Virus record (IMG/VR): IMGVR_UViG_3300037297_000066
Span: 186,001-250,000 of that record
Direction: 5' to 3' (one strand)
DNA length: 64,000 nucleotides
Every line of letters starts with the position of its first letter. The first letter of the stretch is position 1. Below the pieces are notes generated by a model. It made no database searches. It saw only the letters and a program-made list of their open reading frames with translations, and was not told the origin of the DNA. A program made the position numbers and the translations under genes. This document shows, piece after piece, positions 5,924-54,629 of the stretch.

Positions 5924-5929
5924 TCTCCC

Positions 5930-6746: not shown

Positions 6747-7619
6747 TTACCCCGGGCTCGAACCAGAGTCCGTGCCCCCAATAATCCCGCTCTCCCGCAA
6801 CTCCTCCACCACAGCCCGGGTGATGGCCTCACTCCCATAGCTCGAAATAGCACCCCTGAACCGTCGCTCCCCTTCGCTCAAATCTACGTTGGAATGACGG
6901 GCCACCCGCTCATAAACCTCAGATACCCAGCACACCATCTCAGGGGTAACCCATTGACCGTTCAGAGATAGATAGGACCCTAGGGATACCCCAGAGCTCA
7001 AAGCTTCACTCACCCTGGCCCTCAACATCCCAAGGGAAGGCGCCTCCTCCACACTCCTATCCCTCCACCGGGGCTCAGCCAGTACCTCCACAATGGCCCG
7101 AGTGATCTCATCCTGGCCAAAGGTCCGGCCCCACAAAAGTCGGAACTCTAGCTCCTCAGGTGAAAGCTCGGCCCCAGACTCGGAAACATAGTCTAGGTAC
7201 TCTGCCTCGTCCCACCCAGGATCGTCCCTGTAGCGAAACGTATACCCCGGTCGCTGCTCTGGCCTAGGAACCGGATAGCTCCCAAGGTAAGGGCCCTCCT
7301 CCAAAGCTGCTCTCGCTACCTCCAAAAGCTCCTGGTAGTCGTGGGTGACCCAACCCCTAGGCTCTTCCCCAAACGCCCCAGTCGGGAACCCGAAGCCATC
7401 CCCGAGCACCTGAAGCACACAAGGCATCAGGAAGGAAGGGACATGCTCCATTTTCACACTGGGACCCCCACGGGCCTGACGGCAGTAGACAGCGAAGTAA
7501 AGCGTTCCCCTCGCACCCCTCATTACCTCAATCCGATAGGTCTCCTCAGACTCCTCGTCCTCAGCCAGTCTGTAGTGGGTCCTATTCTCACCCCGGATGG
7601 TGTCGATGACCCGTAGCAT
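6747..7619 (-). CDS. Array paralogue 12, duplicated C-domain
   Basis: FGQDEITRAIVEV and YGSEAITRAVVEE; leaderless ATG. Confidence 0.85.
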   Translation of the reverse strand: MLRVIDTIRGENRTHYRLAEDEESEETYRIEVMRGARGTLYFAVYCRQARGGPSVKMEHVPSFLMPCVLQVLGDGFGFPTGAFGEEPRGWVTHDYQELLEVARAALEEGPYLGSYPVPRPEQRPGYTFRYRDDPGWDEAEYLDYVSESGAELSPEELEFRLLWGRTFGQDEITRAIVEVLAEPRWRDRSVEEAPSLGMLRARVSEALSSGVSLGSYLSLNGQWVTPEMVCWVSEVYERVARHSNVDLSEGERRFRGAISSYGSEAITRAVVEELRESGIIGGTDSGSSPG

Positions 7620-7641
7620 GCCCCCACCATACACCAGAACC

Positions 7642-8190
7642 TCAGGGGAACGTCCCCACTCGCTCCCCCAAGAGCAGGAGAACCTCCCGGGTGATCTCCT
7701 CCTGCGTAAACCGAGCCCCATGGCGAAGCCGAAACCGAACCTCCTCCGGCGTGAGTAGATTCCCCCAATACTGAACTACCCTCTCGTACTCCTCAGAATC
7801 CCACCCCTCACGCCCGGGCTCGGACCACCCCCCTCCATGGACCCTCTGGTAGCTCCCTAGCTCTACCCCCACCTCCTGGAAAAACTCCTCAACCAGCTGG
7901 GCCAGAGAGTCCGGGCCCTCAGGAGCGTCTAGAAATGGGCCCTCATAAGCCCCAGGGTCCTCCCCCATGGCCTGTAGGACAAAAGGCACCAGTCTGAATG
8001 GAACGGCCTTCAACTCTACCCACGCAACCCCAAAATCGCTCCGATAGTAGATGTGGACAAACCCGAGCTCCTGAGTGGAAGGGGCCGGACGTACCCAAAT
8101 CCGAAACAGAATGGGAGAACCCTCGCTCTCCCCTACCGTGTGGACGAAAGTCAGGTCCTCAGACCGCTGCTCGACCTTGAGAATGCGCAC
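7642..8190 (-). CDS. Array paralogue 13
   Basis: FRLRHGARFTQEEITREV; leaderless GTG. Confidence 0.85.
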   Translation of the reverse strand: MRILKVEQRSEDLTFVHTVGESEGSPILFRIWVRPAPSTQELGFVHIYYRSDFGVAWVELKAVPFRLVPFVLQAMGEDPGAYEGPFLDAPEGPDSLAQLVEEFFQEVGVELGSYQRVHGGGWSEPGREGWDSEEYERVVQYWGNLLTPEEVRFRLRHGARFTQEEITREVLLLLGERVGTFP

Positions 8191-8225
8191 CCCTTCACCA
8201 TACACGAGCACACCCCCACTCCTCC

Positions 8226-8267
8226 AGGGGGAAGAACCCTTGCGGGATGAGAAGAGTCCTTCCCCCT
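8226..8267 (-). repeat. Hairpin E copy 1 (16-bp stem, loop CTCATCCCGC)
   Basis: Fully paired on minus strand with G-U pairs; same loop as 9295-9336. Confidence 0.7.
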
Positions 8268-8307
8268 CCAACTTGACCCTTTAACCCAAACCTGTGAGAA
8301 TTGGCCC

Positions 8308-8514
8308 ATGGCCCCAAAACCTGACCTGGCCTCAGTCTTCAAGGCGCTAGACGCTCACGACCTGCCCTTCCTGTCCAATATGGGCCAAAGCACCGCCCAC
8401 CTCCTGGACGAGAATAACCCCAACGGGGTGGTCGTCCTCCGGGATGAGAGAGGAAATGACCGCCTCTACATGCCCCGTAGCGTCTGGGATGAGCTACGAG
8501 CTGGCAGATGCTAG
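8308..8514 (+). CDS. Hypothetical protein
   Basis: 68-aa ORF filling the gap, opposite to the array. Confidence 0.55.
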   Translation: MAPKPDLASVFKALDAHDLPFLSNMGQSTAHLLDENNPNGVVVLRDERGNDRLYMPRSVWDELRAGRC

Positions 8515-8829
8515 CGAGTTCAGAATCTCTGCCACAATGGCATCGGAGATCTCCTCCTGGTCGTAATACCGCCCCCAAACAAAGCGGAACTGAAGTTCAC
8601 CATCTAGCAATAGACTGGGAGCCTCTGCAACCGTGTCCAGATAGTCAACTAAACTCCACCCACCCGTAGCTGGAGTCACCAGGGGGAAGTCTTCCCCTTC
8701 CCCCTCAGATCCATAGAACTGACCAAGCTCTACCCCATTTTCCAAGGCTTGTTTCACCGAAGCCTGAAGATCCCCATCAAGAGTCGTGTCAATAGAGTCA
8801 TCAAACGGACCCTTAGGCAAAACCAGCAT
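8494..8829 (-). CDS. Array paralogue 14 (C-domain only)
   Basis: GPF, LGQFY, FRFVWGRYYDQEEISDAI. Confidence 0.8.
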   Translation of the reverse strand: MLVLPKGPFDDSIDTTLDGDLQASVKQALENGVELGQFYGSEGEGEDFPLVTPATGGWSLVDYLDTVAEAPSLLLDGELQFRFVWGRYYDQEEISDAIVAEILNSLASASS

Positions 8830-9245
8830 CAGTGGTCCGTAAGGGCCCGCTTGAGCCCCTGGTACAACGCCTCTACCCTCGGCCAGTTCAACCCCATCAA
8901 GGGAACCTTCAGTTGAGCAGTCCCCACCCGGACCTTCACACCCTCACTGTCGGCTATGACCAGTGAAAGATGCTTCGGGTCCCAGCACAACCATACGGGT
9001 CGCCCCAAACGCTCCAGAGCCCCCTCCACATCACAAAAGGGTAGCTTGTCGTCATCTACGACCGTCCCCCGATACTCGATGCCCAGTAGCTGAGCTAGTA
9101 CCTCCCCCAGCCCCGTAGAACGGCCCTTTCCCCATACCTCGTCCCGGTAGGTCTCGTAGACCACCCCGAAAGCTTCCGGGGGCTCAGCCCTCTTCCAACC
9201 CTCCTGGGTCGGTACGTAGACCTTTGTGTCGTCTCGGATGCCCAT
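8829..9245 (-). CDS. Hypothetical protein
   Basis: ATG 6 nt after GGTGTACAGT. Confidence 0.75.
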   Translation of the reverse strand: MGIRDDTKVYVPTQEGWKRAEPPEAFGVVYETYRDEVWGKGRSTGLGEVLAQLLGIEYRGTVVDDDKLPFCDVEGALERLGRPVWLCWDPKHLSLVIADSEGVKVRVGTAQLKVPLMGLNWPRVEALYQGLKRALTDH

Positions 9246-9294
9246 GGCCTGACTGTACACCACAAGAGAGCTCCCCCGAAAGGGCTCAGGCCCA

Positions 9295-9336
9295 AGGGAG
9301 AAGATTCCTTGCGGGATGAGAAGGTTCCTTCCCCCC
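9295..9336 (-). repeat. Hairpin E copy 2
   Basis: Same 10-nt loop, stem sequence differs but still pairs. Confidence 0.7.
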
Positions 9337-9421
9337 TCACACCCCTCCCCCCATGGGGATGGCCCGGCGTAGCCCCGCCACCCCCCACAGAACTTAGCTA
9401 GGTAAGGGCTGTGAGCGGCCC
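9336..9421 (-). ncRNA. Candidate structured element related to 17347-17492
   Basis: Shares CTCACA/TGTGAG outer stem, GTTCT(C)GTGGGGG(G)TGGCGGGGC and CCCATGG. Confidence 0.4.
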
Positions 9422-9651
9422 CCAAGGCCCGCTTCCTTCTTAGCTACCTCGATTACCTCAAGTACTAGCATTCGAAGGAGTACTTGAGACGTGGGAGGAA
9501 AATGGCCGATGAGCTCTTGGACACCCTCCAAACAAGCCCTCTGAAGCTCCCCCACTGATACTCCTTGGCGAAGCCCCACGCTGAGCTGTCGAGCTAGATC
9601 CATGAACATGGCTGTGTCTTTCTCTACCTGCTCTTCTTTCGAGATGGACAT
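9394..9651 (-). CDS. Hypothetical protein
   Basis: ATG 6 nt after GGTGTACGGT. Confidence 0.7.
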   Translation of the reverse strand: MSISKEEQVEKDTAMFMDLARQLSVGLRQGVSVGELQRACLEGVQELIGHFPPTSQVLLRMLVLEVIEVAKKEAGLGGRSQPLPS

Positions 9652-9699
9652 ACCCTCACCGTACACCAGCCTCCTGAGCCCCCTACTAGGTTTTCTTTG

Positions 9700-10320
9700 G
9701 GAGGCCCCTCCCCCAAAAGGTCCCCCAGGGAGGGGTTGGGGCCTATGTAGGCGTATTCTCTCAGGGTTTCGGGGAGGCGTAAAAATCCTGCGGACAAAAA
9801 GGCCGGACATTTCGTGATGAAGAATCTTAGGGAGGTTTTGTACGTAAAGCCGTCTTTTCCCGGGGTTTTTGGATATACCGGCTCATTGGCCGAATCCGGC
9901 CCATGGGCAAAGCAACGATCAGGCCAAGGCACAGCTTTGAGATTCTGTCAATATTATTCGACTCCGGCCCTACGAATCATTGGTCATACCGGCCCACGGG
10001 TCATTTTAGGGCCGGGGCCCGGGGCTTCGCCGGGGCCGACGGCTGGAGGTTGCCCTGTTGGGGGGAGGGCCGGGGAATGGCGGAATCGAAGCAAGGAATT
10101 GACAACTCCCTATTTGGAAGATCCGGAATTTGGAAATCCCTAAGTTGGGCATTGCCGAATTACAAAATGCACAATCCCACCGCCGGCCCCTGGTGGGGGG
10201 AACCGAGGTGGGATCAGGTAGACAAAAAGGTGAGCGGCCCGGCCCTGGGCGTGGGGGGGAAACGCCTCTGGGGCCAGACCGCTCTGGAGCCTCGACAGTA
10301 GATCGGGCAGGTCGCCTTGT
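9700..10320. other. Non-coding region with 7 CCGGCCC heptamers and A/T tracts (origin or terminus candidate)
   Basis: No convincing ORF; heptamers at 9896, 9964, 9989, 10009(-), 10067(-), 10183, 10239. Confidence 0.4.
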
Positions 10321-10326
10321 CCAGAC

Positions 10327-10378
10327 AAAACGACTGACCCCCTCCAGACACAGCAGCCAATGAGGGGGTCATAGTCGT
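10327..10378 (-). terminator. Intrinsic terminator-like hairpin
   Basis: ACGACT-AT-GACCCCCTC...GAGGGGGTC-AGTCGT followed by TTT on the minus strand. Confidence 0.65.
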
Positions 10379-10452
10379 ACGCAGAGACTCGATTATAGTG
10401 CTACTCGATAGGGCCTCCGTTCCTTGATGGTTGTAGGGTTGTTGTTACGCTC

Positions 10453-10686
10453 TCAGGAGAAGAAGTTGGTCTCGGTCCGGTCGTCGTACTGGTCCACGGC
10501 CTGGGCCCGGTACTTGCCGTCCGCACACAGGAACACTCGGCAGTAGGTCCCGAAGAGGATTCGGAACCCCCGGTACTTCTCGGTTCCGTCCGTGGTGTAC
10601 TCGTCGTCCAACCAATCGGTCTGGGGGCCAGTTCTCCAGCGGTTTCCGGTGTTCAGCTTGAAGCAGTGTTCGGCGTGGTGAGTCAT
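10453..10686 (-). CDS. Hypothetical protein (class-A cassette)
   Basis: ATG 6 nt after motif A. Confidence 0.8.
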   Translation of the reverse strand: MTHHAEHCFKLNTGNRWRTGPQTDWLDDEYTTDGTEKYRGFRILFGTYCRVFLCADGKYRAQAVDQYDDRTETNFFS

Positions 10687-10692
10687 GTCTCT

Positions 10693-10721
10693 ATTACACG
10701 TGAGAGGGTTGGATCTTAACC
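10693..10721 (-). promoter_or_regulatory. Class-A promoter 1
   Basis: GGTTAAGATC-N12-GTGTAAT, ATG after 6 nt. Confidence 0.8.
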
Positions 10722-10735
10722 CGGGCTCCTCGGAA

Positions 10736-11059
10736 TCAGTACGCCTCGGCCCAGCCGCCACACTTGGGGCACCGGATACGCTGACCGGGCCGGTAGCCGA
10801 AGGACAGGAGGTCCTCGCAGGCACCGCACTGGCACTCCCCGTTGCTGCTGCGTCGGGGCCGGGGGCTGCTGGTGCCCTTCGAGGATTCGGTCTGGACCAG
10901 GGTCACCTTGCCGTCGGTCCAGAGGACACGTTGCACTGTGGCTGTCCAGGTCTTGCCGGCCTTGGTGTTGATCTCGATGATGGCGCCTTGTTGAACTGAA
11001 CCCTGAACTCGGGCACCCCAGGAGCCGTCACGGAGCTTGGAGGGAGTTGCTTTCGTCAT
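10736..11059 (-). CDS. Small protein with Cys-rich Zn-binding C-terminus
   Basis: CQCGAC..CPKCG; motif A start. Confidence 0.8.
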   Translation of the reverse strand: MTKATPSKLRDGSWGARVQGSVQQGAIIEINTKAGKTWTATVQRVLWTDGKVTLVQTESSKGTSSPRPRRSSNGECQCGACEDLLSFGYRPGQRIRCPKCGGWAEAY

Positions 11060-11065
11060 GCCCTT

Positions 11066-11094
11066 ATTACACGTGAGGGGCTCCGATCTTAACC
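11066..11094 (-). promoter_or_regulatory. Class-A promoter 2
   Basis: Motif A, ATG after 6 nt. Confidence 0.8.
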
Positions 11095-11125
11095 CGGGCC
11101 CCTTTCAAAAAATCAGAGACGGCTG

Positions 11126-11154
11126 GGTTAAGATCCAACCCTCTCAGGTGTAGT
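11126..11154 (+). promoter_or_regulatory. Class-A promoter 3
   Basis: Motif A, ATG after 6 nt. Confidence 0.8.
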
Positions 11155-11160
11155 GAGATC

Positions 11161-11361
11161 ATGGCATACCCGTACAACAACTGGGCCATCAAGCACGACG
11201 AACTAGGATTCTACGACGGCACCCTCCACGGGAAGCCCTGGTTTGGGGCGGACCAGTATGACGCCCACGGCTACCGGACCCGGAAGGATGCCCAGGCTGT
11301 GATAGACGGGGACCCCGAAGGGTTCAAGAACGCCCGGCCAGTGAACCTGAAGAAGTTGTAG
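11161..11361 (+). CDS. Hypothetical protein (class-A cassette)
   Basis: Motif A start. Confidence 0.8.
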   Translation: MAYPYNNWAIKHDELGFYDGTLHGKPWFGADQYDAHGYRTRKDAQAVIDGDPEGFKNARPVNLKKL

Positions 11362-11524
11362 AGGGAAGCCCTGCTACGGCTCTGCCCAGAGCCTCCCCTA
11401 GGCTACCCTCAGGGAACAGGTCAGCAGCCCAGGCTCCTGCCTCTTGAATCTCAGCTCGAAGGCGACGCTTCCCAGCTGGGGTTCTGAGGTAGGCGGCCAG
11501 GGCCTGTTCTTCTTGTGGAGTCAT
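11324..11524 (-). CDS. Hypothetical protein
   Basis: MTPQEEQALAAYLRTPAGKRRL; last gene of a minus-strand operon. Confidence 0.6.
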   Translation of the reverse strand: MTPQEEQALAAYLRTPAGKRRLRAEIQEAGAWAADLFPEGSLGEALGRAVAGLPSTTSSGSLAGRS

Positions 11525-11530
11525 CTCGAC

Positions 11531-11578
11531 CCAGAGTAGGCCCCCAGGGAGGGGCTGTCTACTCCCTGGGGGCTCTGG
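11531..11578. terminator. Strong intergenic hairpin
   Basis: CCCCCAGGGAG/CTCCCTGGGGG 11-bp stem plus CCAGAG/CTCTGG. Confidence 0.55.
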
Positions 11579-11806
11579 TCAGATGTTGCGAATCAGGGCG
11601 TCCCGGCCCTTTCCAGTGGCAGCGTAGTGCCCCCTGGGGCCCCGGTGCACCCAGAGCTTCTTAGCCATCCTCAGGAGGGTAAGGGAGGCCCAGGCTGAGG
11701 CTGTCTGGGGAGGCTTGCCCCCGACGTCGATGCCCACCCGGGTGGGGGAGACGTAGCCGCCTTCGGCCACGAGATAGCCCAGGATGGCTTCTTCTTTGGA
11801 GGTCAT
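11579..11806 (-). CDS. Winged-helix-like DNA-binding protein
   Basis: AILGYL..SPTRVG..L.RM.K..V...RGHYAAT.KG. Confidence 0.65.
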   Translation of the reverse strand: MTSKEEAILGYLVAEGGYVSPTRVGIDVGGKPPQTASAWASLTLLRMAKKLWVHRGPRGHYAATGKGRDALIRNI

Positions 11807-12057
11807 GCGGCCTTCTTCTGGGACCGTTCCCGGCATTTCTTGAGTTGAGAGAGGATTGACTTGCCCTCCTCGGAGACTTCGTAGCGACGGCCGTGTTGGT
11901 CCACCAACCCGTGCCGAACCAACTTCTGGAGGGGAGAGGCGGCCCAGAGGGGGGCGATGCTATGGTGATGGTTACCGACCAAAACCCCGATCTTCGTGAG
12001 GGAGGTGGGGCCCCTGCGGGCCAGGAAGGCTAGGATCGATTCCTGTCGGAGGGTCAT
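11803..12057 (-). CDS. Winged-helix-like protein, paralogue of 11579
   Basis: SILAFL..LQKLVRHGLV..RRYEVSEEG. Confidence 0.65.
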   Translation of the reverse strand: MTLRQESILAFLARRGPTSLTKIGVLVGNHHHSIAPLWAASPLQKLVRHGLVDQHGRRYEVSEEGKSILSQLKKCRERSQKKAA

Positions 12058-12263
12058 CAGATCCTCACAATGGAGTCAGGGGCCACTCCGAAGTGGTCCA
12101 AGAGCCACTCTTCGGCCGTGTTCCTTCGGAGCTCGAAGGACAGGACGACCTCTCTGTTGCCCCCCACGATGTTGCTGGGCATGTCTGTGTGCAGGTAGAC
12201 CCGATCGACGCCCATCTTGTCGTAGACGACGTTGACCCGGGTGACTTGGAAGTGAGGAGTCAT
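12057..12263 (-). CDS. Hypothetical protein
   Basis: SD GAAAGGA upstream; downstream of class-A promoter 4. Confidence 0.75.
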   Translation of the reverse strand: MTPHFQVTRVNVVYDKMGVDRVYLHTDMPSNIVGGNREVVLSFELRRNTAEEWLLDHFGVAPDSIVRI

Positions 12264-12294
12264 TGGGTTCCTTTCAGGTGTGGAGCCTACTTCT

Positions 12295-12323
12295 ACTACA
12301 CGTGAGGGGGCTGGATCTTAACC
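12295..12323 (-). promoter_or_regulatory. Class-A promoter 4 (leadered)
   Basis: Motif A followed by about 25-nt leader with SD. Confidence 0.75.
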
Positions 12324-12324
12324 C

Positions 12325-12525
12325 TCACCGGAAGGTAACACTCCGACGCCTCTTGCACTCGACCAGAAGGCCCGCTGCCGACAGCTTCCGGAGGTAGCGG
12401 ATGGCCACCTCTCGGGAGGGGAGGCCCAAGGCTCTCCTGGCATCATGAGCCGTGAAGGGCCTGTCCGGGTAGACGCCTCGGAGGAAGTCAGCGTTCCGGG
12501 CGTCGTCCTGGGTTACCTTGGCCAT
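12325..12525 (-). CDS. Small HTH-like protein
   Basis: FTAHDARRALGLPS..RYLRKLSAAGLL; motif A start. Confidence 0.7.
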   Translation of the reverse strand: MAKVTQDDARNADFLRGVYPDRPFTAHDARRALGLPSREVAIRYLRKLSAAGLLVECKRRRSVTFR

Positions 12526-12531
12526 GCCCTT

Positions 12532-12560
12532 ATTACACGTGAGGGGGTTGGATCTTAACC
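12532..12560 (-). promoter_or_regulatory. Class-A promoter 5
   Basis: Motif A, ATG after 6 nt. Confidence 0.8.
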
Positions 12561-12577
12561 CTGATCGGAGAGAGGGG

Positions 12578-12769
12578 TCAGTCCTTCACGACCCGGGGCA
12601 TCATGCGAGCGGTAGCCCCGTACCTTCGGGCACGCTCGTTGGCCTGTTCTAGGGTGAGGCCCCGAGCTGAGATGTAGTGAGGCTCGCCCCCGATTCGGAC
12701 CTCCACGTGGTAGGTGGGCTCCTTGGGCTCCTCGGGGGAGATGTTCTTGGAAGTGTTGTCGGTTGCCAT
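12578..12769 (-). CDS. TYHVE..RGLTL..VVKD family protein
   Basis: Paralogue of 12940 and 13887; motif A start. Confidence 0.8.
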   Translation of the reverse strand: MATDNTSKNISPEEPKEPTYHVEVRIGGEPHYISARGLTLEQANERARRYGATARMMPRVVKD

Positions 12770-12775
12770 GCCCCT

Positions 12776-12804
12776 ATTACACGTGAGGGGGTTGGATCTT
12801 AACC
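12776..12804 (-). promoter_or_regulatory. Class-A promoter 6
   Basis: Motif A; perfect 12-bp hairpin GACCCCCGGGAG just upstream. Confidence 0.8.
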
Positions 12805-12906
12805 CTGAACGTAGTGACCCCCGGGAGTTTCTGAGGCTCCCGGGGGTCGGGGTTCGGAGTTCTAACAGATATACCCCACCATACACCGGAGCTCAGGGTT
12901 TGGAGC

Positions 12907-12943
12907 CAGGTTTTTTGAGGGGTCAGGTTTTTTGAGGGGTCAG
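12907..12943. repeat. 17-bp tandem duplication CAGGTTTTTTGAGGGGT
   Basis: Two adjacent copies at the gene end. Confidence 0.7.
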
Positions 12944-13263
12944 TCCTTCACGACCCAAGCTTTCATGGGATGGTACTTCTGAGCCCACCTCTGGGCCTCT
13001 TCGAGAGTACGCCCCCGAGGGGACACGACGACAGGGTAACTCCTCACATGGATCTCCACGTGAAAGGTGGGCTCTGGAGTGGGGTTCTTCTTGGCTTCCC
13101 ACCGGGCCAGGACGGCCTGGCACCGGGTGCAGTTGACGTGCTCCTTGGCGGACGTGGTGCTGTGAGCTCGTCGGTTCCCACACACGGGCCTTCCTCCCCC
13201 GGTTTGGGAGAAGTGCATCACGAGGCCCTTGCGGGTCTTTTTGCTGGGGGTGCCGGTTGCCAT
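12940..13263 (-). CDS. Zn-finger + VVKD family protein
   Basis: H..CG..CTRC then TFHVE..RGRTLEEA..VVKD. Confidence 0.8.
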   Translation of the reverse strand: MATGTPSKKTRKGLVMHFSQTGGGRPVCGNRRAHSTTSAKEHVNCTRCQAVLARWEAKKNPTPEPTFHVEIHVRSYPVVVSPRGRTLEEAQRWAQKYHPMKAWVVKD

Positions 13264-13269
13264 GCCCCT

Positions 13270-13298
13270 ATTACACGTGAGGGGGGCCGATCTTAACC
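13270..13298 (-). promoter_or_regulatory. Class-A promoter 7
   Basis: Motif A, ATG after 6 nt. Confidence 0.8.
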
Positions 13299-13432
13299 CG
13301 GCCCGTGGGTATAAAAACAGGCCCGACCCGAGACCCGAAGCACCCATAACTCCCCGTATGGGGGCCTCGGATCGGGGGAAAAACGGGGTGAATTTTCGAC
13401 CGGGGTTCGATATCAGAAATAGCCTGGCCCGG

Positions 13433-13461
13433 GGTTAAGATCCGAGGCTCCCAGGTGTATT
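13433..13461 (+). promoter_or_regulatory. Class-A promoter 8
   Basis: Motif A variant (GTGTATT), ATG after 6 nt. Confidence 0.75.
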
Positions 13462-13467
13462 AGGGGC

Positions 13468-13593
13468 ATGAGCAAGAAGACGATGGTCACCCTGGCTTGT
13501 TGGATGCTCGCCCTGGCAACCTCGTCTGCTCAGACACCCCCCAAGGCCCGGACAGTGGAGCTCGAAGCCACCCTGGTTCAGGCCACCCTGTGA
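13468..13593 (+). CDS. 41-aa signal-peptide-like protein (not in ORF track)
   Basis: MSKKTMVTLACWMLALATSSAQ...; motif A start. Confidence 0.65.
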   Translation: MSKKTMVTLACWMLALATSSAQTPPKARTVELEATLVQATL

Positions 13594-13601
13594 GGACCCC
13601 C

Positions 13602-13835
13602 ATGAACGCCTACCTGATTCACAAGGACAAGATGGCCCGGATCGCCTTCCCCGATGACGCCCCTTCCGAGGTAGTGGACCGGATCAAGCGGGCCGTGGCC
13701 TCCCACATGACCCACCCCGATGGGATCCGACGCCCGGAGATGAGGGTGTGTGGGTGCCGGGTCTACTGGGCCTCCCCACTGTACTACTCGGACGTCCCCT
13801 CGGACCGCATCGAGTCGGCCTCGGACTACGTCTGA
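13602..13835 (+). CDS. Hypothetical protein
   Basis: GAGG SD before MNAYLIH. Confidence 0.7.
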   Translation: MNAYLIHKDKMARIAFPDDAPSEVVDRIKRAVASHMTHPDGIRRPEMRVCGCRVYWASPLYYSDVPSDRIESASDYV

Positions 13836-13851
13836 GAATCGCTCCTCTCCG

Positions 13852-13880
13852 GGTTAAGATCCAACCCTCTCAGGTGTAGT
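13852..13880 (+). promoter_or_regulatory. Class-A promoter 9
   Basis: Identical to copies 3, 10, 11. Confidence 0.8.
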
Positions 13881-13886
13881 GAGATC

Positions 13887-14156
13887 ATGGCAAGAAAACC
13901 TCGTCCTGACTGCCCCAACTGTGGGCATTCCCGGTGGACCTACAGGCTGTCCCAGCACTACTGGGCTTGTCAGAGGTGCCATGCCACCTGGGCGACGAAC
14001 GCCTACCAGAACAGGCCCCAAACCTACCACGTGGAGACCCGTCCACGTTACTCCGTCTCCAAGCGGGGGCTCACTCTCGTCGAGGCCCAACACAAGGCCC
14101 GAAAGTACAACTCCACCCATTTCCCCCAAGCCCACGTCGTGAAGGACGCATCATGA
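13887..14156 (+). CDS. Zn-ribbon + VVKD family protein
   Basis: CPNCG..CQRC, TYHVE..RGLTL..VVKD. Confidence 0.8.
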   Translation: MARKPRPDCPNCGHSRWTYRLSQHYWACQRCHATWATNAYQNRPQTYHVETRPRYSVSKRGLTLVEAQHKARKYNSTHFPQAHVVKDAS

Positions 14157-14362
14157 ACAAGAACGAAGTTTGGAAACGCTACCGTCGAGGCGACCACATC
14201 ACGGACCACGAGCTGGAAGTGCTCCTCAAAGACACGAAGCGGGCTCTGGACTCCCTGGTCTACCGGAACGACTACGGAGTCGTCACCCTGGCCCTGGCTG
14301 CGGATGTGGCCGCCCTGGAGGGGTACCAGCGTTCCCGGGAAATCCGGAAGCTCGAAGGCTGA
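14153..14362 (+). CDS. Hypothetical protein
   Basis: ATGA overlap, SD AAGGA. Confidence 0.75.
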   Translation: MNKNEVWKRYRRGDHITDHELEVLLKDTKRALDSLVYRNDYGVVTLALAADVAALEGYQRSREIRKLEG

Positions 14363-14374
14363 GCCCCCTCTCCG

Positions 14375-14403
14375 GGTTAAGATCCAACCCTCTCAGGTGT
14401 AGT
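14375..14403 (+). promoter_or_regulatory. Class-A promoter 10
   Basis: Motif A, ATG after 6 nt. Confidence 0.8.
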
Positions 14404-14409
14404 GAGATC

Positions 14410-14637
14410 ATGGCACAGAACAAGACCCCTGGTGGATTCAAGGTAACCCCCGCCCGTGCTGGGCAACCCCCGGTGGGTTCCAAGGTGGCCGTCAAGGCCC
14501 GAGTCAACCCCCTGGACTGGCCCTACAAGGACCGGGAGGGGACGGTCCTCGGCTACTCGGTCCCCCACGGGTTTGCCGTCCTCTCCTCCCATGGAGAGGA
14601 GCTCCTCATCCACCCCGAGAACCTGGACCTGGTCTGA
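14410..14637 (+). CDS. Small SH3/KOW-like beta protein
   Basis: VGSKVAV..YKDREGTVLG..LIHPENLDLV. Confidence 0.7.
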   Translation: MAQNKTPGGFKVTPARAGQPPVGSKVAVKARVNPLDWPYKDREGTVLGYSVPHGFAVLSSHGEELLIHPENLDLV

Positions 14638-14655
14638 GCAGAAATCGTAGGCCCG

Positions 14656-14684
14656 GGTTAAGATCCAACCCTCTCAGGTGTAGT
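14656..14684 (+). promoter_or_regulatory. Class-A promoter 11
   Basis: Motif A, ATG after 6 nt. Confidence 0.8.
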
Positions 14685-14690
14685 GTAGGT

Positions 14691-14981
14691 ATGACCAACG
14701 CAACCCTCCGAATGGTCCCTCAGGAAGCGGTAGACCCCCGGACCACTGAGGCCCGCTACAGCCACCCAGCCGTCTGCCACTGGTTCCCGACCACGCAGGC
14801 TTGGACCTGGGACGGAGGGGATGCCCTGGTGGTCGTGACCGGCCACTGCCCCGAGGTTCAGCCCTACGTGATCCTCAGGGTCGAGGACAAGGTTCACGTG
14901 GTCCCCGCTGAGGGGCTCACCTCGGCCGCTAGGGCCTTCGGGCTCGACCTGGCTCTGGCCCCCCTCCCCGAGGAGAACTAA
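14691..14981 (+). CDS. Hypothetical protein
   Basis: Motif A start. Confidence 0.75.
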   Translation: MTNATLRMVPQEAVDPRTTEARYSHPAVCHWFPTTQAWTWDGGDALVVVTGHCPEVQPYVILRVEDKVHVVPAEGLTSAARAFGLDLALAPLPEEN

Positions 14982-15418
14982 TGCAGGTCGTCATCCTGAG
15001 AGGGCTCCCGGGGTCAGGCAAGAGCTACATGGCCCGTACCATTGAGGGGGCCGTGGTCTGCTCGACGGACGACTACTTCGTGGACGGGGACGGACACTAC
15101 AAGTGGGAGGGAGCCAAGGTCCACTGGGCTCACAAGCAGTGCTTCCGGAAGTTCCTGCGGACCCTCCAGGAGGGCACGGCTCAGGTGGTGATTGTGGACA
15201 ACACTAACCTCCTGGCTTGGGAGATCGCCCCCTACTACCAGCTGGCTGAGTCCCTCGGGCACCAGGTGGTGATTGTGACCATCGAGGCCCCGGTGGAGCT
15301 CTGCAAGCGTCGGAACGTCCACGAGTGCCCCCCTGAGGTCATCGACCGGAGATACCGGGCTATGGTCCTGGAGCAGCTACCCCCCTACTGGGAGCACATT
15401 GTTCACCGGGAGGGTTAA
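14981..15418 (+). CDS. AAA_33 / N4BP2-like P-loop (polynucleotide) kinase
   Basis: LRGLPGSGKS Walker A, STDDYF, IVDNTN, RNVH. Confidence 0.88.
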   Translation: MQVVILRGLPGSGKSYMARTIEGAVVCSTDDYFVDGDGHYKWEGAKVHWAHKQCFRKFLRTLQEGTAQVVIVDNTNLLAWEIAPYYQLAESLGHQVVIVTIEAPVELCKRRNVHECPPEVIDRRYRAMVLEQLPPYWEHIVHREG

Positions 15419-15441
15419 GATCTGGGCCCCTCACGTGTAGT
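15413..15441 (+). promoter_or_regulatory. Class-A promoter 12 (no start codon at +1)
   Basis: Motif A; predicted +1 at G15448. Confidence 0.75.
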
Positions 15442-15447
15442 TATGGT

Positions 15448-15633
15448 GAACGGACGACATACCAGGACACGCCGAGAACAGCCTAGTGAGAGGTTCTGAC
15501 CGGCAGCGGCCCACGGGGGCGGGGAGATCTAGGCCCTGGAGAAACCCTTTGACAGATCCCCCCGAGGCCGGGCCTCATTAGCGGTCAGTCAGTCTCGGTA
15601 CTGGGGTCTCGCCTTGTGGGTTCTATGTCGTTC
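15448..15633. ncRNA. Candidate convergent sRNA pair with long central hairpin
   Basis: Two facing class-A promoters; both predicted transcripts start GAACG..ACATA; nested stems 15496-15588. Confidence 0.55.
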
Positions 15634-15639
15634 CCTTCC

Positions 15640-15668
15640 ATTACACGTGAGGCCCTCAGATCTTAACC
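15640..15668 (-). promoter_or_regulatory. Class-A promoter 13 (no start codon at +1)
   Basis: Motif A; predicted +1 at 15633. Confidence 0.75.
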
Positions 15669-15856
15669 TGAGGGGGGCGGAAATTACGCTTTGACCCCGG
15701 GAGGCTCCCGCACCGATCGCAACACTCCCCGGGCTGTCCCTGGGAGTCGGTGCAGAGGACCCCTTCCCGGGGGAGGGGGCGGCCACAGTTTGAGCAGTGG
15801 CGGCCCTGCCAGTAGGAGGGGTCGGGGGAGGGAGGCTTGGGGGAGGCGTGGGGCAT
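15656..15856 (-). CDS. Small Cys-rich Zn-finger protein
   Basis: CSNCG..CCDRCG; motif A start. Confidence 0.7.
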   Translation of the reverse strand: MPHASPKPPSPDPSYWQGRHCSNCGRPLPREGVLCTDSQGQPGECCDRCGSLPGSKRNFRPPQVKI

Positions 15857-15862
15857 GTCCCT

Positions 15863-15891
15863 ACTACACGTGAAAGGGCCAGATCTTAACC
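15863..15891 (-). promoter_or_regulatory. Class-A promoter 14
   Basis: Motif A, ATG after 6 nt. Confidence 0.8.
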
Positions 15892-15896
15892 CATGG

Positions 15897-16058
15897 AGAA
15901 AGGAAAGCCCCAAGCAGGGGGCCAGGGGCTTTCCGGTATCCTGTCGATCAGCATGTCAAAAATTCCGGAGTCGATCCCGGATTACGCTTTAGCAGGCTAA
16001 CACCTACTTCGGAGGCCCTCTGGCCTGGGCTCTCGGTGCGGGTTCTTGATTCCTCATG
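15897..16058 (-). ncRNA. Candidate ~160-nt sRNA or 17-codon peptide transcript
   Basis: Promoter A15, micro-ORF 16004-16057, ends in GGAAAGCCCC/GGGGCTTTCC-TTT hairpin. Confidence 0.45.
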
Positions 16059-16064
16059 TTCTCT

Positions 16065-16093
16065 ACTACACGTGAGGGGCCCAGATCTTAACC
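16065..16093 (-). promoter_or_regulatory. Class-A promoter 15
   Basis: Motif A, ATG after 7 nt. Confidence 0.75.
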
Positions 16094-16350
16094 CGTGGTG
16101 TATGGTAGGTGTGTATTTCAGGTCTCTAAGGTAAGGAAGGGCTCCTCCGGGGGCCCTTCTCGCTATTTTCCCTTTGGACAGGCTCTAGACGCATGAGGGC
16201 AGTTCTACGCCGGCTTCGACGTCGGCTCATACTACGGTGGTACCAGCGGTGTGCCTGCTGTGGGAGGGTGTACTGTCGGGCTTCCCGTCGGGCCGGGGAC
16301 GGAGTATGCTCAGCCACCTGCCAGGTATTGATTGACTCAGGGACTGAGGT

Positions 16351-16536
16351 ATGGAGCTCACATACATCGCATCGACCGTCGGGGTGATAGTAGGACTTGC
16401 CCTTGGGTTGTGGGTGGGTGAGATCCGAAGTAGTCGAGCATACCGAAGAGGGGTTGAGGATGAGCACCGGAGGGCAGGCCGGTGTTGGGTGAGGCAGCAG
16501 GTCGAGGGGCAGCTGCCCCCCGGAGTAGGTCAGTAG
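16351..16536 (+). CDS. Small membrane protein
   Basis: N-terminal TM, AYRRGVEDE; GAGGT SD. Confidence 0.6.
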   Translation: MELTYIASTVGVIVGLALGLWVGEIRSSRAYRRGVEDEHRRAGRCWVRQQVEGQLPPGVGQ

Positions 16537-17035
16537 GCCAATCGACAATCGAGTGTCGATTTCGGTTGCCCGGGGTGGACGGGTGTGCCTGCGGTTCAAC
16601 CACCGGCCCGCCGTAAAAAAACCGCTCCATTAACTTTTTCGGTTGTACCGAGAGTGGAAATGGGCACATTCAATGTCCGTGAATCCAGAAACTGTCGGGG
16701 GGTCAAAATCCCAGTAATTCAGACCCTCCTTGGGGGGAGGGGGACCCTTTTGGAGTCCCTGAGCTCTGGAATGGATCTCGAAATTTTCTAGGGTTCGGAA
16801 ATTTCTGGGAGATCTGGGTTAAACCAGGGGTTTGGCTCATGCTCCCCTGGGGGGCCAAGCAGATTCCCTAGCCTGGGTTGGTAGTTCTGGGGGCCGTAGT
16901 GTACAGTGATGGAGGCAGGGCCCTCTTTTGTGCCCACCTCTTTGGCACCGGGTCCGTCATTGCCCGTTATCTTTCCGGGGGGTCCTGCCACTTACTTCTA
17001 GCCACGAGCCTTTTTTTAGGGCTACCTTCGGGGCC

Positions 17036-17290
17036 ATGGTCAACAACAAGAAGCCGGGCCGTCCCCCGACCCCCAAGAAGTCTCAGTTACTCCCTCCTCA
17101 AGTGACCACGGTTGCCCAATGGTACCGGACCGGACTTTTCAATAGCGAAGAGGAAGCCAGGGGGGCGTTCAGACTCGCTCACCAGCAAGGGCTCGATGGG
17201 ATGGGGACAGGGGTTTCGGCGTGGATGGGGTTGCACGAGCAGGAGTACGACTCCTGGATGCGAGACGACTCCCTCCCTCCGAAGAGGTAA
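17036..17290 (+). CDS. Hypothetical protein with AT-hook-like KPGRP
   Basis: MVNNKKPGRPP..WMGLHEQEYDSW. Confidence 0.7.
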   Translation: MVNNKKPGRPPTPKKSQLLPPQVTTVAQWYRTGLFNSEEEARGAFRLAHQQGLDGMGTGVSAWMGLHEQEYDSWMRDDSLPPKR

Positions 17291-17346
17291 CATTTCTCAG
17301 AGCCCGTCTCCTGACTCTATGAGGGGGCCCTGAGGGGTTTGGCTGA

Positions 17347-17498
17347 CCCGATGGGCCCTCACACCTCCAGGGGAGAGAAAGGCTCTCTGGGGGCGTTCTC
17401 GTGGGGGTGGCGGGGCCTTAGGGGTTGCATGGTTCCTCTGGGGTCCCGCCCTCTCCTAGGAGTCCCATGGTTCTGGGGGTGTGAGCCTCGGGATTTTT
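17347..17498 (+). ncRNA. Candidate multi-stem structured RNA
   Basis: 13-bp outer and 16-bp inner stems fully paired only with + strand G-U pairs; T-tract after. Confidence 0.55.
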
Positions 17499-17521
17499 GG
17501 CCCGGTGGACTTTTTGGCTAG

Positions 17522-18861: not shown

Positions 18862-19115
18862 ATGGGAAGAAGAACGCTGCCCTGGCCTTTGGGGATGCCC
18901 CGGACTCGGGAGAACGAGCATTTGTACCAATCGCATGTGGCGTTGGTATTGGGTTGGCCGGTTCGGTCTTTCTGGCACTGGCTCAGGAGTTTTGGGGGAC
19001 GTTCATGAAGAGGGGAGTCAAGACGCAGCTTCTGGTGCTTGAGATTGCGGTACTCTTGGAGGGGGTGGCACTCATGTGGCATTTGGTCCACACGCATGGG
19101 GATTGGTTTTGGTGA
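18862..19115 (+). pseudogene. Two-TM membrane protein, possibly frameshifted
   Basis: Promoter-defined ATG 18862 is out of frame with the TM-coding frame ending 19115. Confidence 0.35.
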
Positions 19116-19214
19116 GCTTTGCCTCAAAAGGGGATTTTCTGGTTTGACAAGGCAAGCTTTTTCGGAAGAAATGAGGGGGAAACAACTCCAGCTCTGCGGT
19201 TTTAAGGCAGAGAC
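19116..19214 (-). repeat. ~99-bp dispersed repeat D, copy 1
   Basis: Near-identical to 40108-40206 and to the reverse complement of 43514-43611. Confidence 0.9.
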
Positions 19215-19215
19215 C

Positions 19216-19826: not shown

Positions 19827-19855
19827 GGTTAAGATCTGGGCTTCCCAGGTGTAGT
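19827..19855 (+). promoter_or_regulatory. Class-A promoter 16
   Basis: Motif A, ATG after 6 nt. Confidence 0.8.
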
Positions 19856-21529: not shown

Positions 21530-21558
21530 GGTTAAGATCCGGGTCCCCCAGGTGTAGT
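21530..21558 (+). promoter_or_regulatory. Class-A promoter 17
   Basis: Motif A, ATG after 6 nt. Confidence 0.8.
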
Positions 21559-27824: not shown

Positions 27825-27853
27825 GGTTAAGATCCAGCTCTCTCAGGTGTAAT
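27825..27853 (+). promoter_or_regulatory. Class-A promoter 18
   Basis: Motif A, ATG after 6 nt. Confidence 0.8.
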
Positions 27854-28548: not shown

Positions 28549-28577
28549 GGTTAAGATCCGGCTCCCTCACGTGTAGT
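28549..28577 (+). promoter_or_regulatory. Class-A promoter 19
   Basis: Motif A, ATG after 6 nt. Confidence 0.8.
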
Positions 28578-42582: not shown

Positions 42583-42611
42583 GGTTAAGATCTGGGCCCC
42601 TCGGGTGTAGT
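42583..42611 (+). promoter_or_regulatory. Class-A promoter 20 (ATT at the start position)
   Basis: Motif A; 5' part identical to copy 12. Confidence 0.65.
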
Positions 42612-54598: not shown

Positions 54599-54606
54599 CC
54601 TCCTCA

Positions 54607-54629
54607 CCATACACCAACTGGTGTATGGT
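54607..54629. promoter_or_regulatory. Back-to-back class-B promoters
   Basis: ACCATACACC-aact-GGTGTATGGT. Confidence 0.75.

What the first reader, a model, noticed from the sequence alone, without database searches (positions are those of the whole stretch)
10453..16093. Island of promoter-headed leaderless gene cassettes built on a 29-bp repeat (motif A)
Seen: 15 copies of GGTTAAGATC-N12-GTGTA(A/G)T in 5.4 kb, on both strands, plus 5 more at 19827, 21530, 27825, 28549 and 42583. In 15 of 20 copies an ATG follows after exactly 6 nt with no SD, and the previous stop often lies within about 20 nt upstream. Copies 3, 9 and 10 are identical through ATGGCA yet head unrelated genes. Cargo is mostly 40-110 aa proteins (wHTH, Zn ribbons) plus a kinase. 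The motif is not a standard sigma70 consensus. Inference: an alternative- or phage-sigma promoter giving leaderless mRNAs that also serves as recombination homology for gene shuffling, analogous to T4-type PeSL cassettes and the SPO1 host-takeover cluster.
Basis: partly seen in the sequence, partly recalled or inferred. Interest (0 to 1): 0.9.

Follow-up and report, generated by a model that had tools for sequence, protein, structure and literature searches.

The report
Promoter repeat that shuffles phage genes
A 437-kb phage puts the same two-box promoter-like repeat directly against the start codon of many small genes, and comparison of natural strains shows that this repeat is also where single genes are gained and lost.

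Summary
The window holds 20 copies of GGTTAAGATC-N12-GTGTART against 0.01 expected, 15 of them in 5.4 kb, and 15 have an ATG exactly 6 nt downstream. The window is positions 186,001-250,000 of a 437,331-bp viral contig. About 190 kb of that genome holds 37 copies, and no other genome searched has the motif.

The repeat ('class A') is best read as a promoter for leaderless mRNAs. Box 1 lies at -35..-26, and TGTART (the last six bases of box 2) lies at -12..-7. Every copy points at a gene. Box 1 never changes between strains, while the spacer differs at 17% of sites.

Leaderless organisation is not special to the island. A second element, GTGTAYRGT ('class B'), occurs 43 times against 1.25 expected and also sits 5-7 nt before start codons.

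The new result concerns gene shuffling. Four diverged strains (about 78-98% identical) differ in island gene content. Five indels run from inside one motif copy to inside the next, and one junction motif is a chimera of two copies. Three more indels re-fuse a promoter to the next start codon.

This works like T4-type PeSL shuffling, but the element has no sigma-70 consensus, no stem-loop and no Shine-Dalgarno site. Transcription start sites and the polymerase or factor remain untested.

The parts
10693..10721 (-). class A motif; ATG 6 nt downstream heads the 77-aa gene 10453-10686
11066..11094 (-). class A motif heading the 107-aa gene 10736-11059; its upstream edge is an indel breakpoint
   Evidence: junction 6
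11126..11154 (+). class A motif, back-to-back with the 11066(-) copy; heads the 66-aa gene 11161-11361
   Evidence: the unit 11096-11578 is absent from L025, L027 and L028
12295..12323 (-). class A motif with a 31-nt leader carrying an SD-like AAAGGAA; heads the operon 12263-11579
   Evidence: partner in junction 1
12532..12560 (-). class A motif heading the 66-aa HTH-like gene 12325-12525
   Evidence: the cassette is reference-only, and the L028/L029 junction motif is a chimera of this copy and the 12295 copy
12776..12804 (-). class A motif heading the 63-aa gene 12578-12769
   Evidence: junction 2: L028 has an extra 108-aa JGI gene (111 aa from my start call), with four CxxC motifs, as a cassette here
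13270..13298 (-). class A motif heading the 107-aa gene 12940-13263
   Evidence: junction 3: L027, L028 and L029 have an extra 142-aa cassette here
13433..13461 (+). class A motif (box 2 is GTGTATT) heading the 41-aa gene 13468-13593 and then the 77-aa gene 13602-13835
   Evidence: in L027 the 41-aa gene is missing and the promoter abuts the 77-aa gene
13852..13880 (+). class A motif heading the 89-aa Zn-ribbon gene 13887-14156 and then the 69-aa gene 14153-14362
   Evidence: junction 4; in L027 it is fused directly to the 69/71-aa gene
14375..14403 (+). class A motif, 49 nt identical to the 13852 copy; heads the 75-aa gene 14410-14637
   Evidence: junction 4
14656..14684 (+). class A motif heading the 96-aa gene 14691-14981 and the coupled AAA_33 kinase 14981-15418
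15413..15441 (+). class A motif without an ORF; faces the 15640(-) copy; insertion point of a 71-aa cassette in L027 and L028
   Evidence: (junction 5)
15442..15639 (.). 198-bp ORF-less stretch between convergent class A promoters; nearly invariant between strains; its ends are inverted repeats
15640..15668 (-). class A motif without an ORF, convergent with the 15413(+) copy
15863..15891 (-). class A motif heading the 66-aa Zn-ribbon gene 15656-15856
16065..16093 (-). class A motif; ATG at 7 nt but only a 17-codon ORF
19827..19855 (+). class A motif heading the 72-aa gene 19862-20080
21530..21558 (+). class A motif heading the 131-aa gene 21565-21960
27825..27853 (+). class A motif heading the 58-aa gene 27860-28036
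28549..28577 (+). class A motif heading the 50-aa gene 28584-28736
42583..42611 (+). class A motif (spacer ends CTCG) with no adjacent ATG; a class B site at 42657 lies between it and the gene 42677-42901
10453..16093 (.). hyperplastic island: minus-strand cassettes 10453-13298, plus-strand cassettes 13433-15441, then three minus-strand copies
   Evidence: gene content differs between four strains
54606..54629 (.). example of a back-to-back class B pair (ACCATACACC-N4-GGTGTATGGT), each 5-7 nt from a start codon; one of 43 class B sites in the window

Best explanation
The repeat is the core of a phage-specific promoter about 36-41 bp long ('class A'), and it doubles as portable recombination homology.

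Anatomy, taking the A of the ATG as +1:
- an invariant 10-bp box, GGTTAAGATC, at -35..-26;
- a C-rich spacer ending in CTCA;
- GTGTART at -13..-7, which gives a -10-like hexamer TGTART at -12..-7;
- a purine-rich 6-nt discriminator;
- then the start codon.

Transcription would start at or next to the A of the ATG, so the mRNA has no leader and no Shine-Dalgarno site. A leaderless gene is translated efficiently only as the first cistron. This explains why so many small genes each carry their own promoter, often only 1-25 nt after the previous stop codon.

A second, commoner element ('class B', TG-TAYRGT followed by a G-rich discriminator, with no -35) does the same job. It matches what a Thermus-type primary sigma reads without a -35 element.

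Class A lacks the key A at -11. It has an upstream box in exactly the place of the T4 MotA box. It therefore most likely needs a phage-encoded specificity factor, either an activator or a sigma acting on the host core polymerase.

The same 30-50 bp stands in front of many unrelated genes. Homologous recombination between copies, within a genome or between co-infecting genomes, deletes, inserts and swaps promoter-plus-gene units that arrive ready to be expressed.

Shown here: the repeat, its geometry, its conservation pattern, and indels between strains with junctions inside the repeat.

Inferred: promoter activity, the start site, leaderless translation, the reading factor, and homologous rather than site-specific recombination.
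For: Repeat and geometry:
- 20 copies against 0.01 expected.
- 37 box 1 + box 2 pairs among 40 box 1 occurrences in about 190 kb, where about 0.4 box 1 occurrences would be expected by chance. GTGTART+6+ATG never occurs in the window without box 1.
- In the 36 exact-pattern copies analysed, the ATG lies at 6-7 nt in 25 copies. All copies are oriented toward a downstream ORF and lie in intergenic gaps barely larger than the motif.

Selection: across 14 orthologous promoter pairs between strains, box 1 shows 0 changes in 140 sites. The spacer shows 17%, the discriminator 20% and the flanks 5-7%.

Promoter logic:
- Class B GTGTAYRRT occurs 43 times against 1.25 expected, mostly 5-7 nt before a start codon.
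- TANNNT adjacent to ORFs drives leaderless genes in Deinococcus-Thermus (PMC12340547).
- GGGA at -6/-3 and a TG-extended -10 favour Thermus sigma-A (PMC3526302).
- The T4 MotA box is 10 bp at -35..-26, 13 bp from the -10 (PMC2988021).

Shuffling:
- L025, L027, L028 and L029 are about 78-98% identical to the window in shared blocks but differ in cassette content.
- In 5 indels the single-motif strain carries the upstream flank of one copy and the downstream flank of the other. One junction motif combines the spacer of the 12532 copy with box 2 of the 12295 copy.
- Three more indels re-fuse a promoter to the next start codon.
- Motif copies cover only about 8% of the island, so chance coincidence of breakpoints with copies is negligible.
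Against:
- TGTART has G where sigma-70-family -10 elements need A at -11. The reading enzyme is therefore unclear.
- No sigma, MotA-like or RNAP domain was found in the roughly 190-200 kb surveyed.
- Eleven of 36 copies have leaders of 9-65 nt or no ORF, so class A is not strictly leaderless.
- The strains are metagenome contigs. Chimeric assembly at a repeat could mimic recombination. Against this, L028 and L029 come from different samples and share the same arrangement, and the reference arrangement recurs in five samples.
- The direction of each event (insertion or deletion) is not resolved.
Confidence: 0.7

Rival explanations
1. Same promoter, but read by the unmodified host holoenzyme. 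Box 1 would be an unusual -35/UP-type element of the unknown host, making these plain early promoters with no phage factor.
For: Class A and class B share GTGTA, the final T 6 nt from the ATG and a G-rich discriminator. No phage sigma or RNAP has been seen so far. PeSL promoters in T4-type phages are host sigma-70 early promoters (PMC2839356).
Against: Box 1 does not resemble TTGACA at any allowed spacing, and the hexamer lacks A at -11 (sequence). A 10-bp element invariant in all copies and strains is unlike a degenerate -35. The composite motif is absent from 185,579 species genomes.
Confidence: 0.2
2. Same promoter, but read by a phage-encoded RNA polymerase, either virion-borne or early, as in phiKZ-like jumbo phages, N4 or P23-45. 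Class A would then mark one temporal class.
For: The conserved block is long (about 30 bp) and nearly invariant, as in phage-RNAP promoters. P23-45 uses two phage RNAPs with distinct motifs plus the host RNAP (PMC10770324). More than half of the 437-kb genome was not surveyed.
Against: No RNAP domain turned up in the surveyed part. The two-box layout with a variable spacer, and the same distance to the ATG as the sigma-type class B, fit a sigma-type holoenzyme better.
Confidence: 0.15
3. The repeat is primarily a site-specific recombination site, an integron-like cassette junction cut by a phage tyrosine recombinase. Promoter-like features would be secondary.
For: Junctions fall inside the motif. 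A 279-aa Phage_integrase-family gene is itself headed by a class A copy (L184 4368-5207).
Against: The motif has no dyad symmetry or core-type inverted arms (sequence). Its position is locked to start codons and gene orientation. It also heads long operons in non-variable regions. Identity between recombining copies extends beyond the motif, to 49 nt in junction 4. Three indels have breakpoints at the start codon rather than in the motif.
Confidence: 0.08
4. The repeat acts at the RNA level, not as a promoter. It would be a processing or cleavage signal, or a ribosome-loading signal, inside long transcripts that frees or marks each downstream cistron.
For: Tandem copies with no terminators between genes would be compatible with polycistronic precursors.
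Against: Back-to-back divergent pairs (11066-/11126+) and the divergence point at 13299-13432 have no upstream transcript to process. There is no conserved RNA structure (mean z -0.29). The box/variable-spacer/box layout and the kinship with class B, a textbook -10 with discriminator, point to DNA recognition.
Confidence: 0.05

Closest known systems
PeSL (promoter-early stem-loop) cassettes of T4-type phages (Arbiol 2010, PMC2839356; Comeau 2014, PMC4122927)
   Same: A repeated promoter motif concentrated in hyperplastic regions and placed just upstream of small ORFan genes. Indels between close relatives are bounded by the motif, and the single-copy genome carries a chimeric motif. Cassettes bring their own expression signal.
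   Different: PeSLs are sigma-70-consensus early promoters with an AT-rich upstream region, a stem-loop terminator and a Shine-Dalgarno site, conserved over about 100 bp. Here there is no sigma-70 consensus, no stem-loop, no SD and a 6-nt gap to the ATG, with a 30-50 bp homology. The phage is a 437-kb non-T4 genome. Mini-circles were not tested.
T4 middle promoters (MotA box plus -10; sigma appropriation by AsiA/MotA; PMC2988021)
   Same: A 10-bp phage-specific box at -35..-26 replaces the -35 element, 13 bp upstream of a hexamer at -12..-7. There are tens of copies per genome.
   Different: T4 needs an excellent TAtaaT, whereas here the hexamer is TGTART. The MotA box tolerates variation, whereas box 1 here is invariant. 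The spacer is partly conserved (CCCTCA). No MotA or AsiA homolog was found.
-10-only promoters abutting ORFs that give leaderless mRNAs in Deinococcus-Thermus (PMC12340547) and, from my own knowledge, in Thermus phages phiYS40 and P23-45 (Sevostyanova 2007; Berdygulova 2011)
   Same: A -10-type element sits 5-7 nt from the start codon with no SD. In the phages a whole temporal class is built this way. Class B here fits this pattern closely, including the TG and GGGA-like context (PMC3526302).
   Different: Class A adds an obligatory upstream box and lacks the TANNNT signature. The host here is unknown. The density, roughly 50 promoter-headed genes in 64 kb, is extreme.
Integron gene cassettes
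   Same: Arrays of small single-gene cassettes are gained and lost at a repeated junction sequence.
   Different: Integron cassettes are promoterless, share one Pc promoter, and recombine at structured attC sites through IntI. Here every cassette carries its own promoter, the junction is the promoter itself, and it has no attC-like symmetry.
SPO1 host-takeover module (own knowledge)
   Same: A dense cluster of small early-type genes, each with strong phage-specific expression signals.
   Different: SPO1 genes have leaders and strong SD sites and use host sigma-A early promoters. No repeat-mediated cassette turnover has been documented there. I ran no test of this comparison.

Membership tests
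PeSL (T4-type promoter-early stem-loop) | Promoter matching the host sigma-70 -35/-10 consensus | tested here: not met
   One search found 0 sigma-70-type sites in 9500-17500. Box 1 does not match TTGACA at 15-18 bp spacing, and the hexamer TGTART lacks A at -11.
PeSL (T4-type promoter-early stem-loop) | Stable stem-loop acting as terminator or attenuator within the motif | tested here: not met
   folding 40 nt upstream plus the motif for 36 copies gave a mean z of -0.29, with only 6 copies below -2. The previous stop codon is often 1-25 nt upstream, leaving no room for a hairpin.
PeSL (T4-type promoter-early stem-loop) | Shine-Dalgarno site and start codon at the 3' end of the motif | tested here: not met
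   The ATG follows box 2 after 6 nt in most copies, which leaves no space for an SD with its spacer.
PeSL (T4-type promoter-early stem-loop) | Concentrated in hyperplastic regions, directly upstream of ORFans | tested here: met
   15 copies lie in 5.4 kb. Cargo proteins have no significant family hits apart from the kinase. Gene content varies between strains.
PeSL (T4-type promoter-early stem-loop) | Indels between close relatives bounded by motif copies, leaving a chimeric motif | tested here: met
   five motif-to-motif indels; the junction 1 motif is chimeric.
PeSL (T4-type promoter-early stem-loop) | Excised mini-circles | not testable with these tools
   Needs reads or PCR.
T4-type middle promoter (MotA/AsiA sigma appropriation) | 10-bp activator box centred near -30, 12 +/- 1 (to 13) bp from the -10 hexamer | tested here: met
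   Box 1 lies at -35..-26 and the hexamer at -12..-7 if the A of the ATG is +1. The T4 geometry is taken from PMC2988021. This holds only if the assumed start site is right.
T4-type middle promoter (MotA/AsiA sigma appropriation) | Near-consensus sigma-70 -10 element (TAtaaT) | tested here: not met
   The hexamer is TGTAAT or TGTAGT in all copies.
T4-type middle promoter (MotA/AsiA sigma appropriation) | MotA and AsiA homologs encoded by the phage | tested here: inconclusive
   No such Pfam family appeared among the proteins scanned or in precomputed hits. Less than half of the genome was covered, and small divergent proteins would be missed.
Leaderless genes with a -10 element adjacent to the ORF (Deinococcus-Thermus type) | TANNNT 5-8 nt upstream of the start codon, with no SD | tested here: not met
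   Class A has TGTART, so the feature is not met. Class B has TAYRGT at 5-7 nt and does meet it.
Leaderless genes with a -10 element adjacent to the ORF (Deinococcus-Thermus type) | Mapped transcription start at or within a few nt of the start codon | not testable with these tools
   No RNA data were reachable.
Integron | Promoterless cassettes with attC sites (imperfect inverted repeats), plus an adjacent intI, attI and Pc | tested here: not met
   Each cassette has its own promoter-like motif, and the motif has no dyad symmetry. The only tyrosine recombinase seen lies elsewhere in the genome.

The most novel reading that the evidence does not exclude
This huge phage runs an obligately 'one promoter per gene' leaderless expression regime. 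One promoter class is read by a specificity factor of a new kind, either a MotA-like activator, sigma or polymerase with no detectable homology, that recognises an invariant 10-bp box. That same promoter has become the phage's general-purpose cassette junction, so new genes are exchanged between genomes, possibly as mini-circles, as self-expressing plug-in units. The invariant 198-bp palindromic element flanked by two convergent class A promoters at the GC-skew switch would be a transcription-activated replication origin or an antisense RNA switch controlling the island.
Probability: 0.3. Interest if true: 0.8.

Novelty: new variant of a known kind. Interest (0 to 1): 0.62.

Why it matters
How phages gain and lose their many small genes of unknown function is poorly understood outside the T4 family.

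This case shows the PeSL-type mechanism, in which recombination at a repeated promoter moves ready-to-express gene cassettes. It operates in an unrelated 437-kb phage, on a different kind of promoter, and it is seen directly in natural populations from several samples.

The case also suggests a structural reason for the arrangement. If mRNAs are leaderless, every gene needs its own promoter against its start codon. The genome then fills with identical short sequences that invite recombination.

The invariant 10-bp box gives a precise handle for finding the unknown factor that reads it. The two promoter classes give a testable map of the phage's expression programme.

Tried and rejected
- **Archaeal-virus idea.** Weak Pfam hints to haloarchaeal families and a box where a TATA element would sit suggested it. 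It was dropped because the phage encodes a GT51 peptidoglycan transglycosylase, PG_binding_1 and a Peptidase_M15_4 endolysin, and internal operon genes have SD-like sites.
- **tRNA-Gly at 29528**. It lies in coding-looking sequence and is 101 nt long, so I treated it as a false positive.
- **Self-trained hexamer gene caller**. It overfitted, so I replaced it with a codon model, which is still noisy.
- **Motif scans.** Scans of metagenome contigs and of 185,579 species genomes gave no hits. The two extra IMG/VR hits, L006 and L009, are chance matches.
- **Megablast of the island against GenBank phages.** No match.
- **Literature search for the 10-mer.** It returned only unrelated primers. A search for sample accessions returned nothing useful.
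- **Same-strain assemblies.** They are 99.8-100% identical and uninformative for shuffling.
- **Host inference.** The ADP-ribosylglycohydrolase and the PurA-like gene gave scattered taxa and no call.
- **PurZ / modified-base idea.** The best solved relatives are ordinary PurA enzymes.
- **Distant huge-phage relatives found through the GT51 protein.** They have 36-68% GC and no class A or class B near that gene.
- **Stem-loop or terminator component.** Not found.
- **One contig look-up.** It failed, probably because my start codon differed from the recorded gene call.

Full report
**1. The observation**

The pattern GGTTAAGATC-N12-GTGTART occurs 20 times in the window against 0.01 expected. Fifteen copies lie between 10693 and 16093.

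An ATG follows after exactly 6 nt in 15 of the 20 copies. An independent repeat finder recovers the same family, and it shows the copies at 13844 and 14367 to be identical over 49 nt.

The conserved unit is longer than 29 bp. It reads ccG-GGTTAAGATC-yrrsyCCCTCAs-GTGTArT-rrrgry-ATG.

No canonical sigma-70 promoter is present in the island.

**2. Where the window comes from**

The window is positions 186,001-250,000 of a 437,331-bp contig. That contig is IMGVR_UViG_3300037297_000066, also recorded as jgi:3300037297 Ga0394146_0000001.

Almost all of its proteins are ORFans. The recognisable genes are typical of huge phages:
- ADP-ribosylglycohydrolase, nucleoside hydrolase and an R2K ATP-grasp protein;
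- an AcrVA2-like protein, dCMP deaminase, PTH2 and Cpn10;
- an L7/L12-like protein, a PurA-like protein and a Ser/Thr kinase;
- a radical-SAM enzyme, a LigT-type ligase and a tyrosine recombinase.

A GT51 transglycosylase, PG_binding_1 and an M15 peptidase point to a bacterial host with peptidoglycan. Full-length relatives of the GT51 protein, at 30-35% identity, occur in many contigs of 200-512 kb with 36-68% GC. None of them carries the motifs described here near that gene. I could not identify the host.

**3. Distribution of the repeat**

All 36 exact copies in IMG/VR belong to this one genome. Two further hits, in unrelated contigs, are chance matches. The motif is absent from the metagenome and species-genome collections.

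In about 190 kb of this genome, box 1 occurs 40 times. Thirty-seven of these have box 2 at the fixed spacing. In the window, box 2 followed by an ATG never occurs without box 1.

Copies lie at about 65-79 kb, 133-153 kb, 166-228 kb and near 268 kb of the record. The element is therefore a genome-wide signal with a dense cluster in the island.

Outside the island it also heads long, translationally coupled operons:
- a nine-gene operon with a radical-SAM enzyme and LigT;
- an operon with the L7/L12-like gene;
- the tyrosine recombinase gene.

Of the 36 copies, 25 have an ATG at 6-7 nt. The rest have leaders of 9-65 nt or no ORF.

**4. A second class**

Many other genes carry GTGTAYRGT 5-7 nt before their start codon. 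There are 43 such sites in the window against 1.25 expected.

These sites often form back-to-back divergent pairs (ACCATACACC-N4-GGTGTATGGT). Such pairs leave no room for a -35 element.

The element reads as TG plus TAYRGT plus a G-rich discriminator. TANNNT next to ORFs is the experimentally validated signature of leaderless genes in Deinococcus-Thermus (PMC12340547). A GGGA element at -6/-3 and TG-extended -10 elements are favoured by Thermus sigma-A (PMC3526302).

Roughly 50 of about 115 predicted genes in the window are headed by class A or class B. Internal operon genes do have SD-like sites.

**5. Why class A is best read as a promoter**

- Every copy points at a downstream gene.
- The copies fill intergenic gaps barely larger than themselves.
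- The distance to the ATG is fixed.
- With the A of the ATG as +1, the final T lies at -7, the hexamer TGTART at -12..-7 and box 1 at -35..-26.
- This is exactly the geometry of T4 middle promoters, where a 10-bp MotA box at -35..-26 lies 13 bp from the -10 (PMC2988021).
- Across 14 orthologous promoter pairs from diverged strains, box 1 has 0 changes in 140 sites. The spacer has 17%, the discriminator 20% and the flanks 5-7%.

The hexamer has G where sigma-70-type -10 elements need A at -11, and box 1 is unlike TTGACA. I therefore favour a phage-encoded activator or sigma acting on the host core enzyme. This step is inference.

No sigma, MotA-like or RNAP domain was found in the roughly 190-200 kb I could survey. 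A direct pattern scan for the beta-prime catalytic motif was truncated.

**6. The shuffling test**

The same phage recurs at 99.8-100% identity in five other samples, which validates the assembly.

Cluster look-ups then revealed diverged strains. Their island contigs are L025, L027, L028 and L029, and shared blocks are about 78-98% identical to the window. Their cassette content differs:
- The 66-aa gene at 11161, the HTH-like gene at 12325 and the Zn-ribbon gene at 13887 are reference-only.
- A four-CxxC gene (108 aa in the JGI call, 111 aa from my start call) is found only in L028 and L029.
- A 142-aa gene and a 71-aa gene are present in the other strains but not in the reference.

In five indels between the reference and L028, the strain with one motif carries the upstream flank of one copy and the downstream flank of the other. 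Homology therefore switches inside the motif. In junction 1 the motif itself is chimeric, with the spacer of the 12532 copy and box 2 of the 12295 copy. A sixth indel starts at the motif edge.

Three indels between the reference and L027 run from the promoter's +1 to the next start codon. Each one restores a promoter that abuts an ATG.

Motif copies cover about 8% of the island, so this coincidence is not chance. L028 and L029 come from different samples and share the same arrangement, which argues against assembly artefacts.

**7. Comparison with known systems**

The behaviour matches PeSL-mediated modular shuffling in T4-type phages (PMC2839356, PMC4122927). The element nevertheless fails three defining PeSL features:
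- it has no sigma-70 consensus;
- it has no stem-loop terminator;
- it has no Shine-Dalgarno site.

It is therefore a new variant that works like a PeSL, not a member of that family.

An integron-like, recombinase-driven mechanism is a minor rival. A class A-headed tyrosine recombinase does exist. However, the motif has no dyad symmetry, homology extends beyond the motif, and some breakpoints lie at the start codon.

**8. Verdict**

Interest is moderate to high. The kind of system is known, but this form of it is new and comes with direct natural-population evidence.

Noticed in passing
window 15442-15639: A 198-bp ORF-less stretch lies between two convergent class A promoters. It is almost invariant between strains that differ by about 10% elsewhere. 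Its ends are inverted repeats (GAACGGACGACATA ... TATGTCGTTC). The same leader start follows another class A copy at L003 1572(-). It could be an antisense RNA pair or small RNA, or a transcription-activated origin. The fold z-scores are weak (-1.3 and -1.8).
   Followed up: partly
window 1-64000 (about 43 sites, e.g. 4193-4201, 29619-29627, 54606-54629): A second promoter-like class, GTGTAYRGT, sits 5-7 nt before start codons. There are 43 sites against 1.25 expected, many as back-to-back divergent pairs. It is less dense in other parts of the genome (12 sites in another 64 kb).
   Followed up: yes
window 515-9425 (- strand), continuing left in L022: A long array of paralogous genes of about 175-300 aa, several with their own class B promoter and similar N-termini (MRIL...). 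None has a family hit. Gene content in this array also differs between the reference and L025.
   Followed up: partly
window 19103-19217, 40095-40209, 43546-43612 (inverted): A three-copy element of about 66-115 nt, 83-97% identical between copies. It contains a hairpin (GCTTTGCC...GGCAAGC) followed by a T-run, plus a TTGACA hexamer. It may be a terminator or a conventional promoter module, and it is unrelated to class A and class B.
   Followed up: partly
window about 10000-16000: GC skew changes sign here, from about -0.2 on the left to +0.1 to +0.2 on the right. The island is GC-richer (0.61-0.63 against about 0.57). It also sits at a divergence point of transcription. This could be an origin or terminus, or it could simply reflect strand bias of genes.
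   Followed up: no
L001 8289(+), L003 632(-), L022 13401(+): Three box 1 occurrences lack the standard box 2. Two have TCGTTGT or TCGTTTT at the box 2 position, possibly a third promoter variant that shares the upstream box. One has GTGTAGA.
   Followed up: no
L184 4368-5207 (-): A 279-aa tyrosine recombinase (Phage_integrase family) has a class A motif 6 nt upstream of its ATG. It may serve lysogeny or dimer resolution, or it may be relevant to cassette movement.
   Followed up: partly
L024 10639-10995 and 18287-19636: The phage encodes a ribosomal L7/L12-like protein inside a class A operon. It also encodes a divergent adenylosuccinate-synthetase homolog next to a Ser/Thr kinase. The closest solved relatives of the synthetase are ordinary PurA, not PurZ.
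   Followed up: partly
all class A copies, positions 7-10 of box 1: Box 1 contains GATC, a Dam-type methylation site, at -29..-26 of every copy. Methylation state could affect recognition of the box.
   Followed up: no
window 12578-12769, 12940-13263, 13887-14156: Three island proteins (63, 107 and 89 aa) share a C-terminal module (..TYHVE..RGLTLEQA..) behind different N-termini, either none or different Zn-binding segments. Modules therefore appear to be shuffled within proteins as well.
   Followed up: partly
window 29528-29628: ARAGORN calls a 101-nt tRNA-Gly(GCC) here. It lies in coding-looking sequence just upstream of a class B promoter and is probably a false positive.
   Followed up: partly
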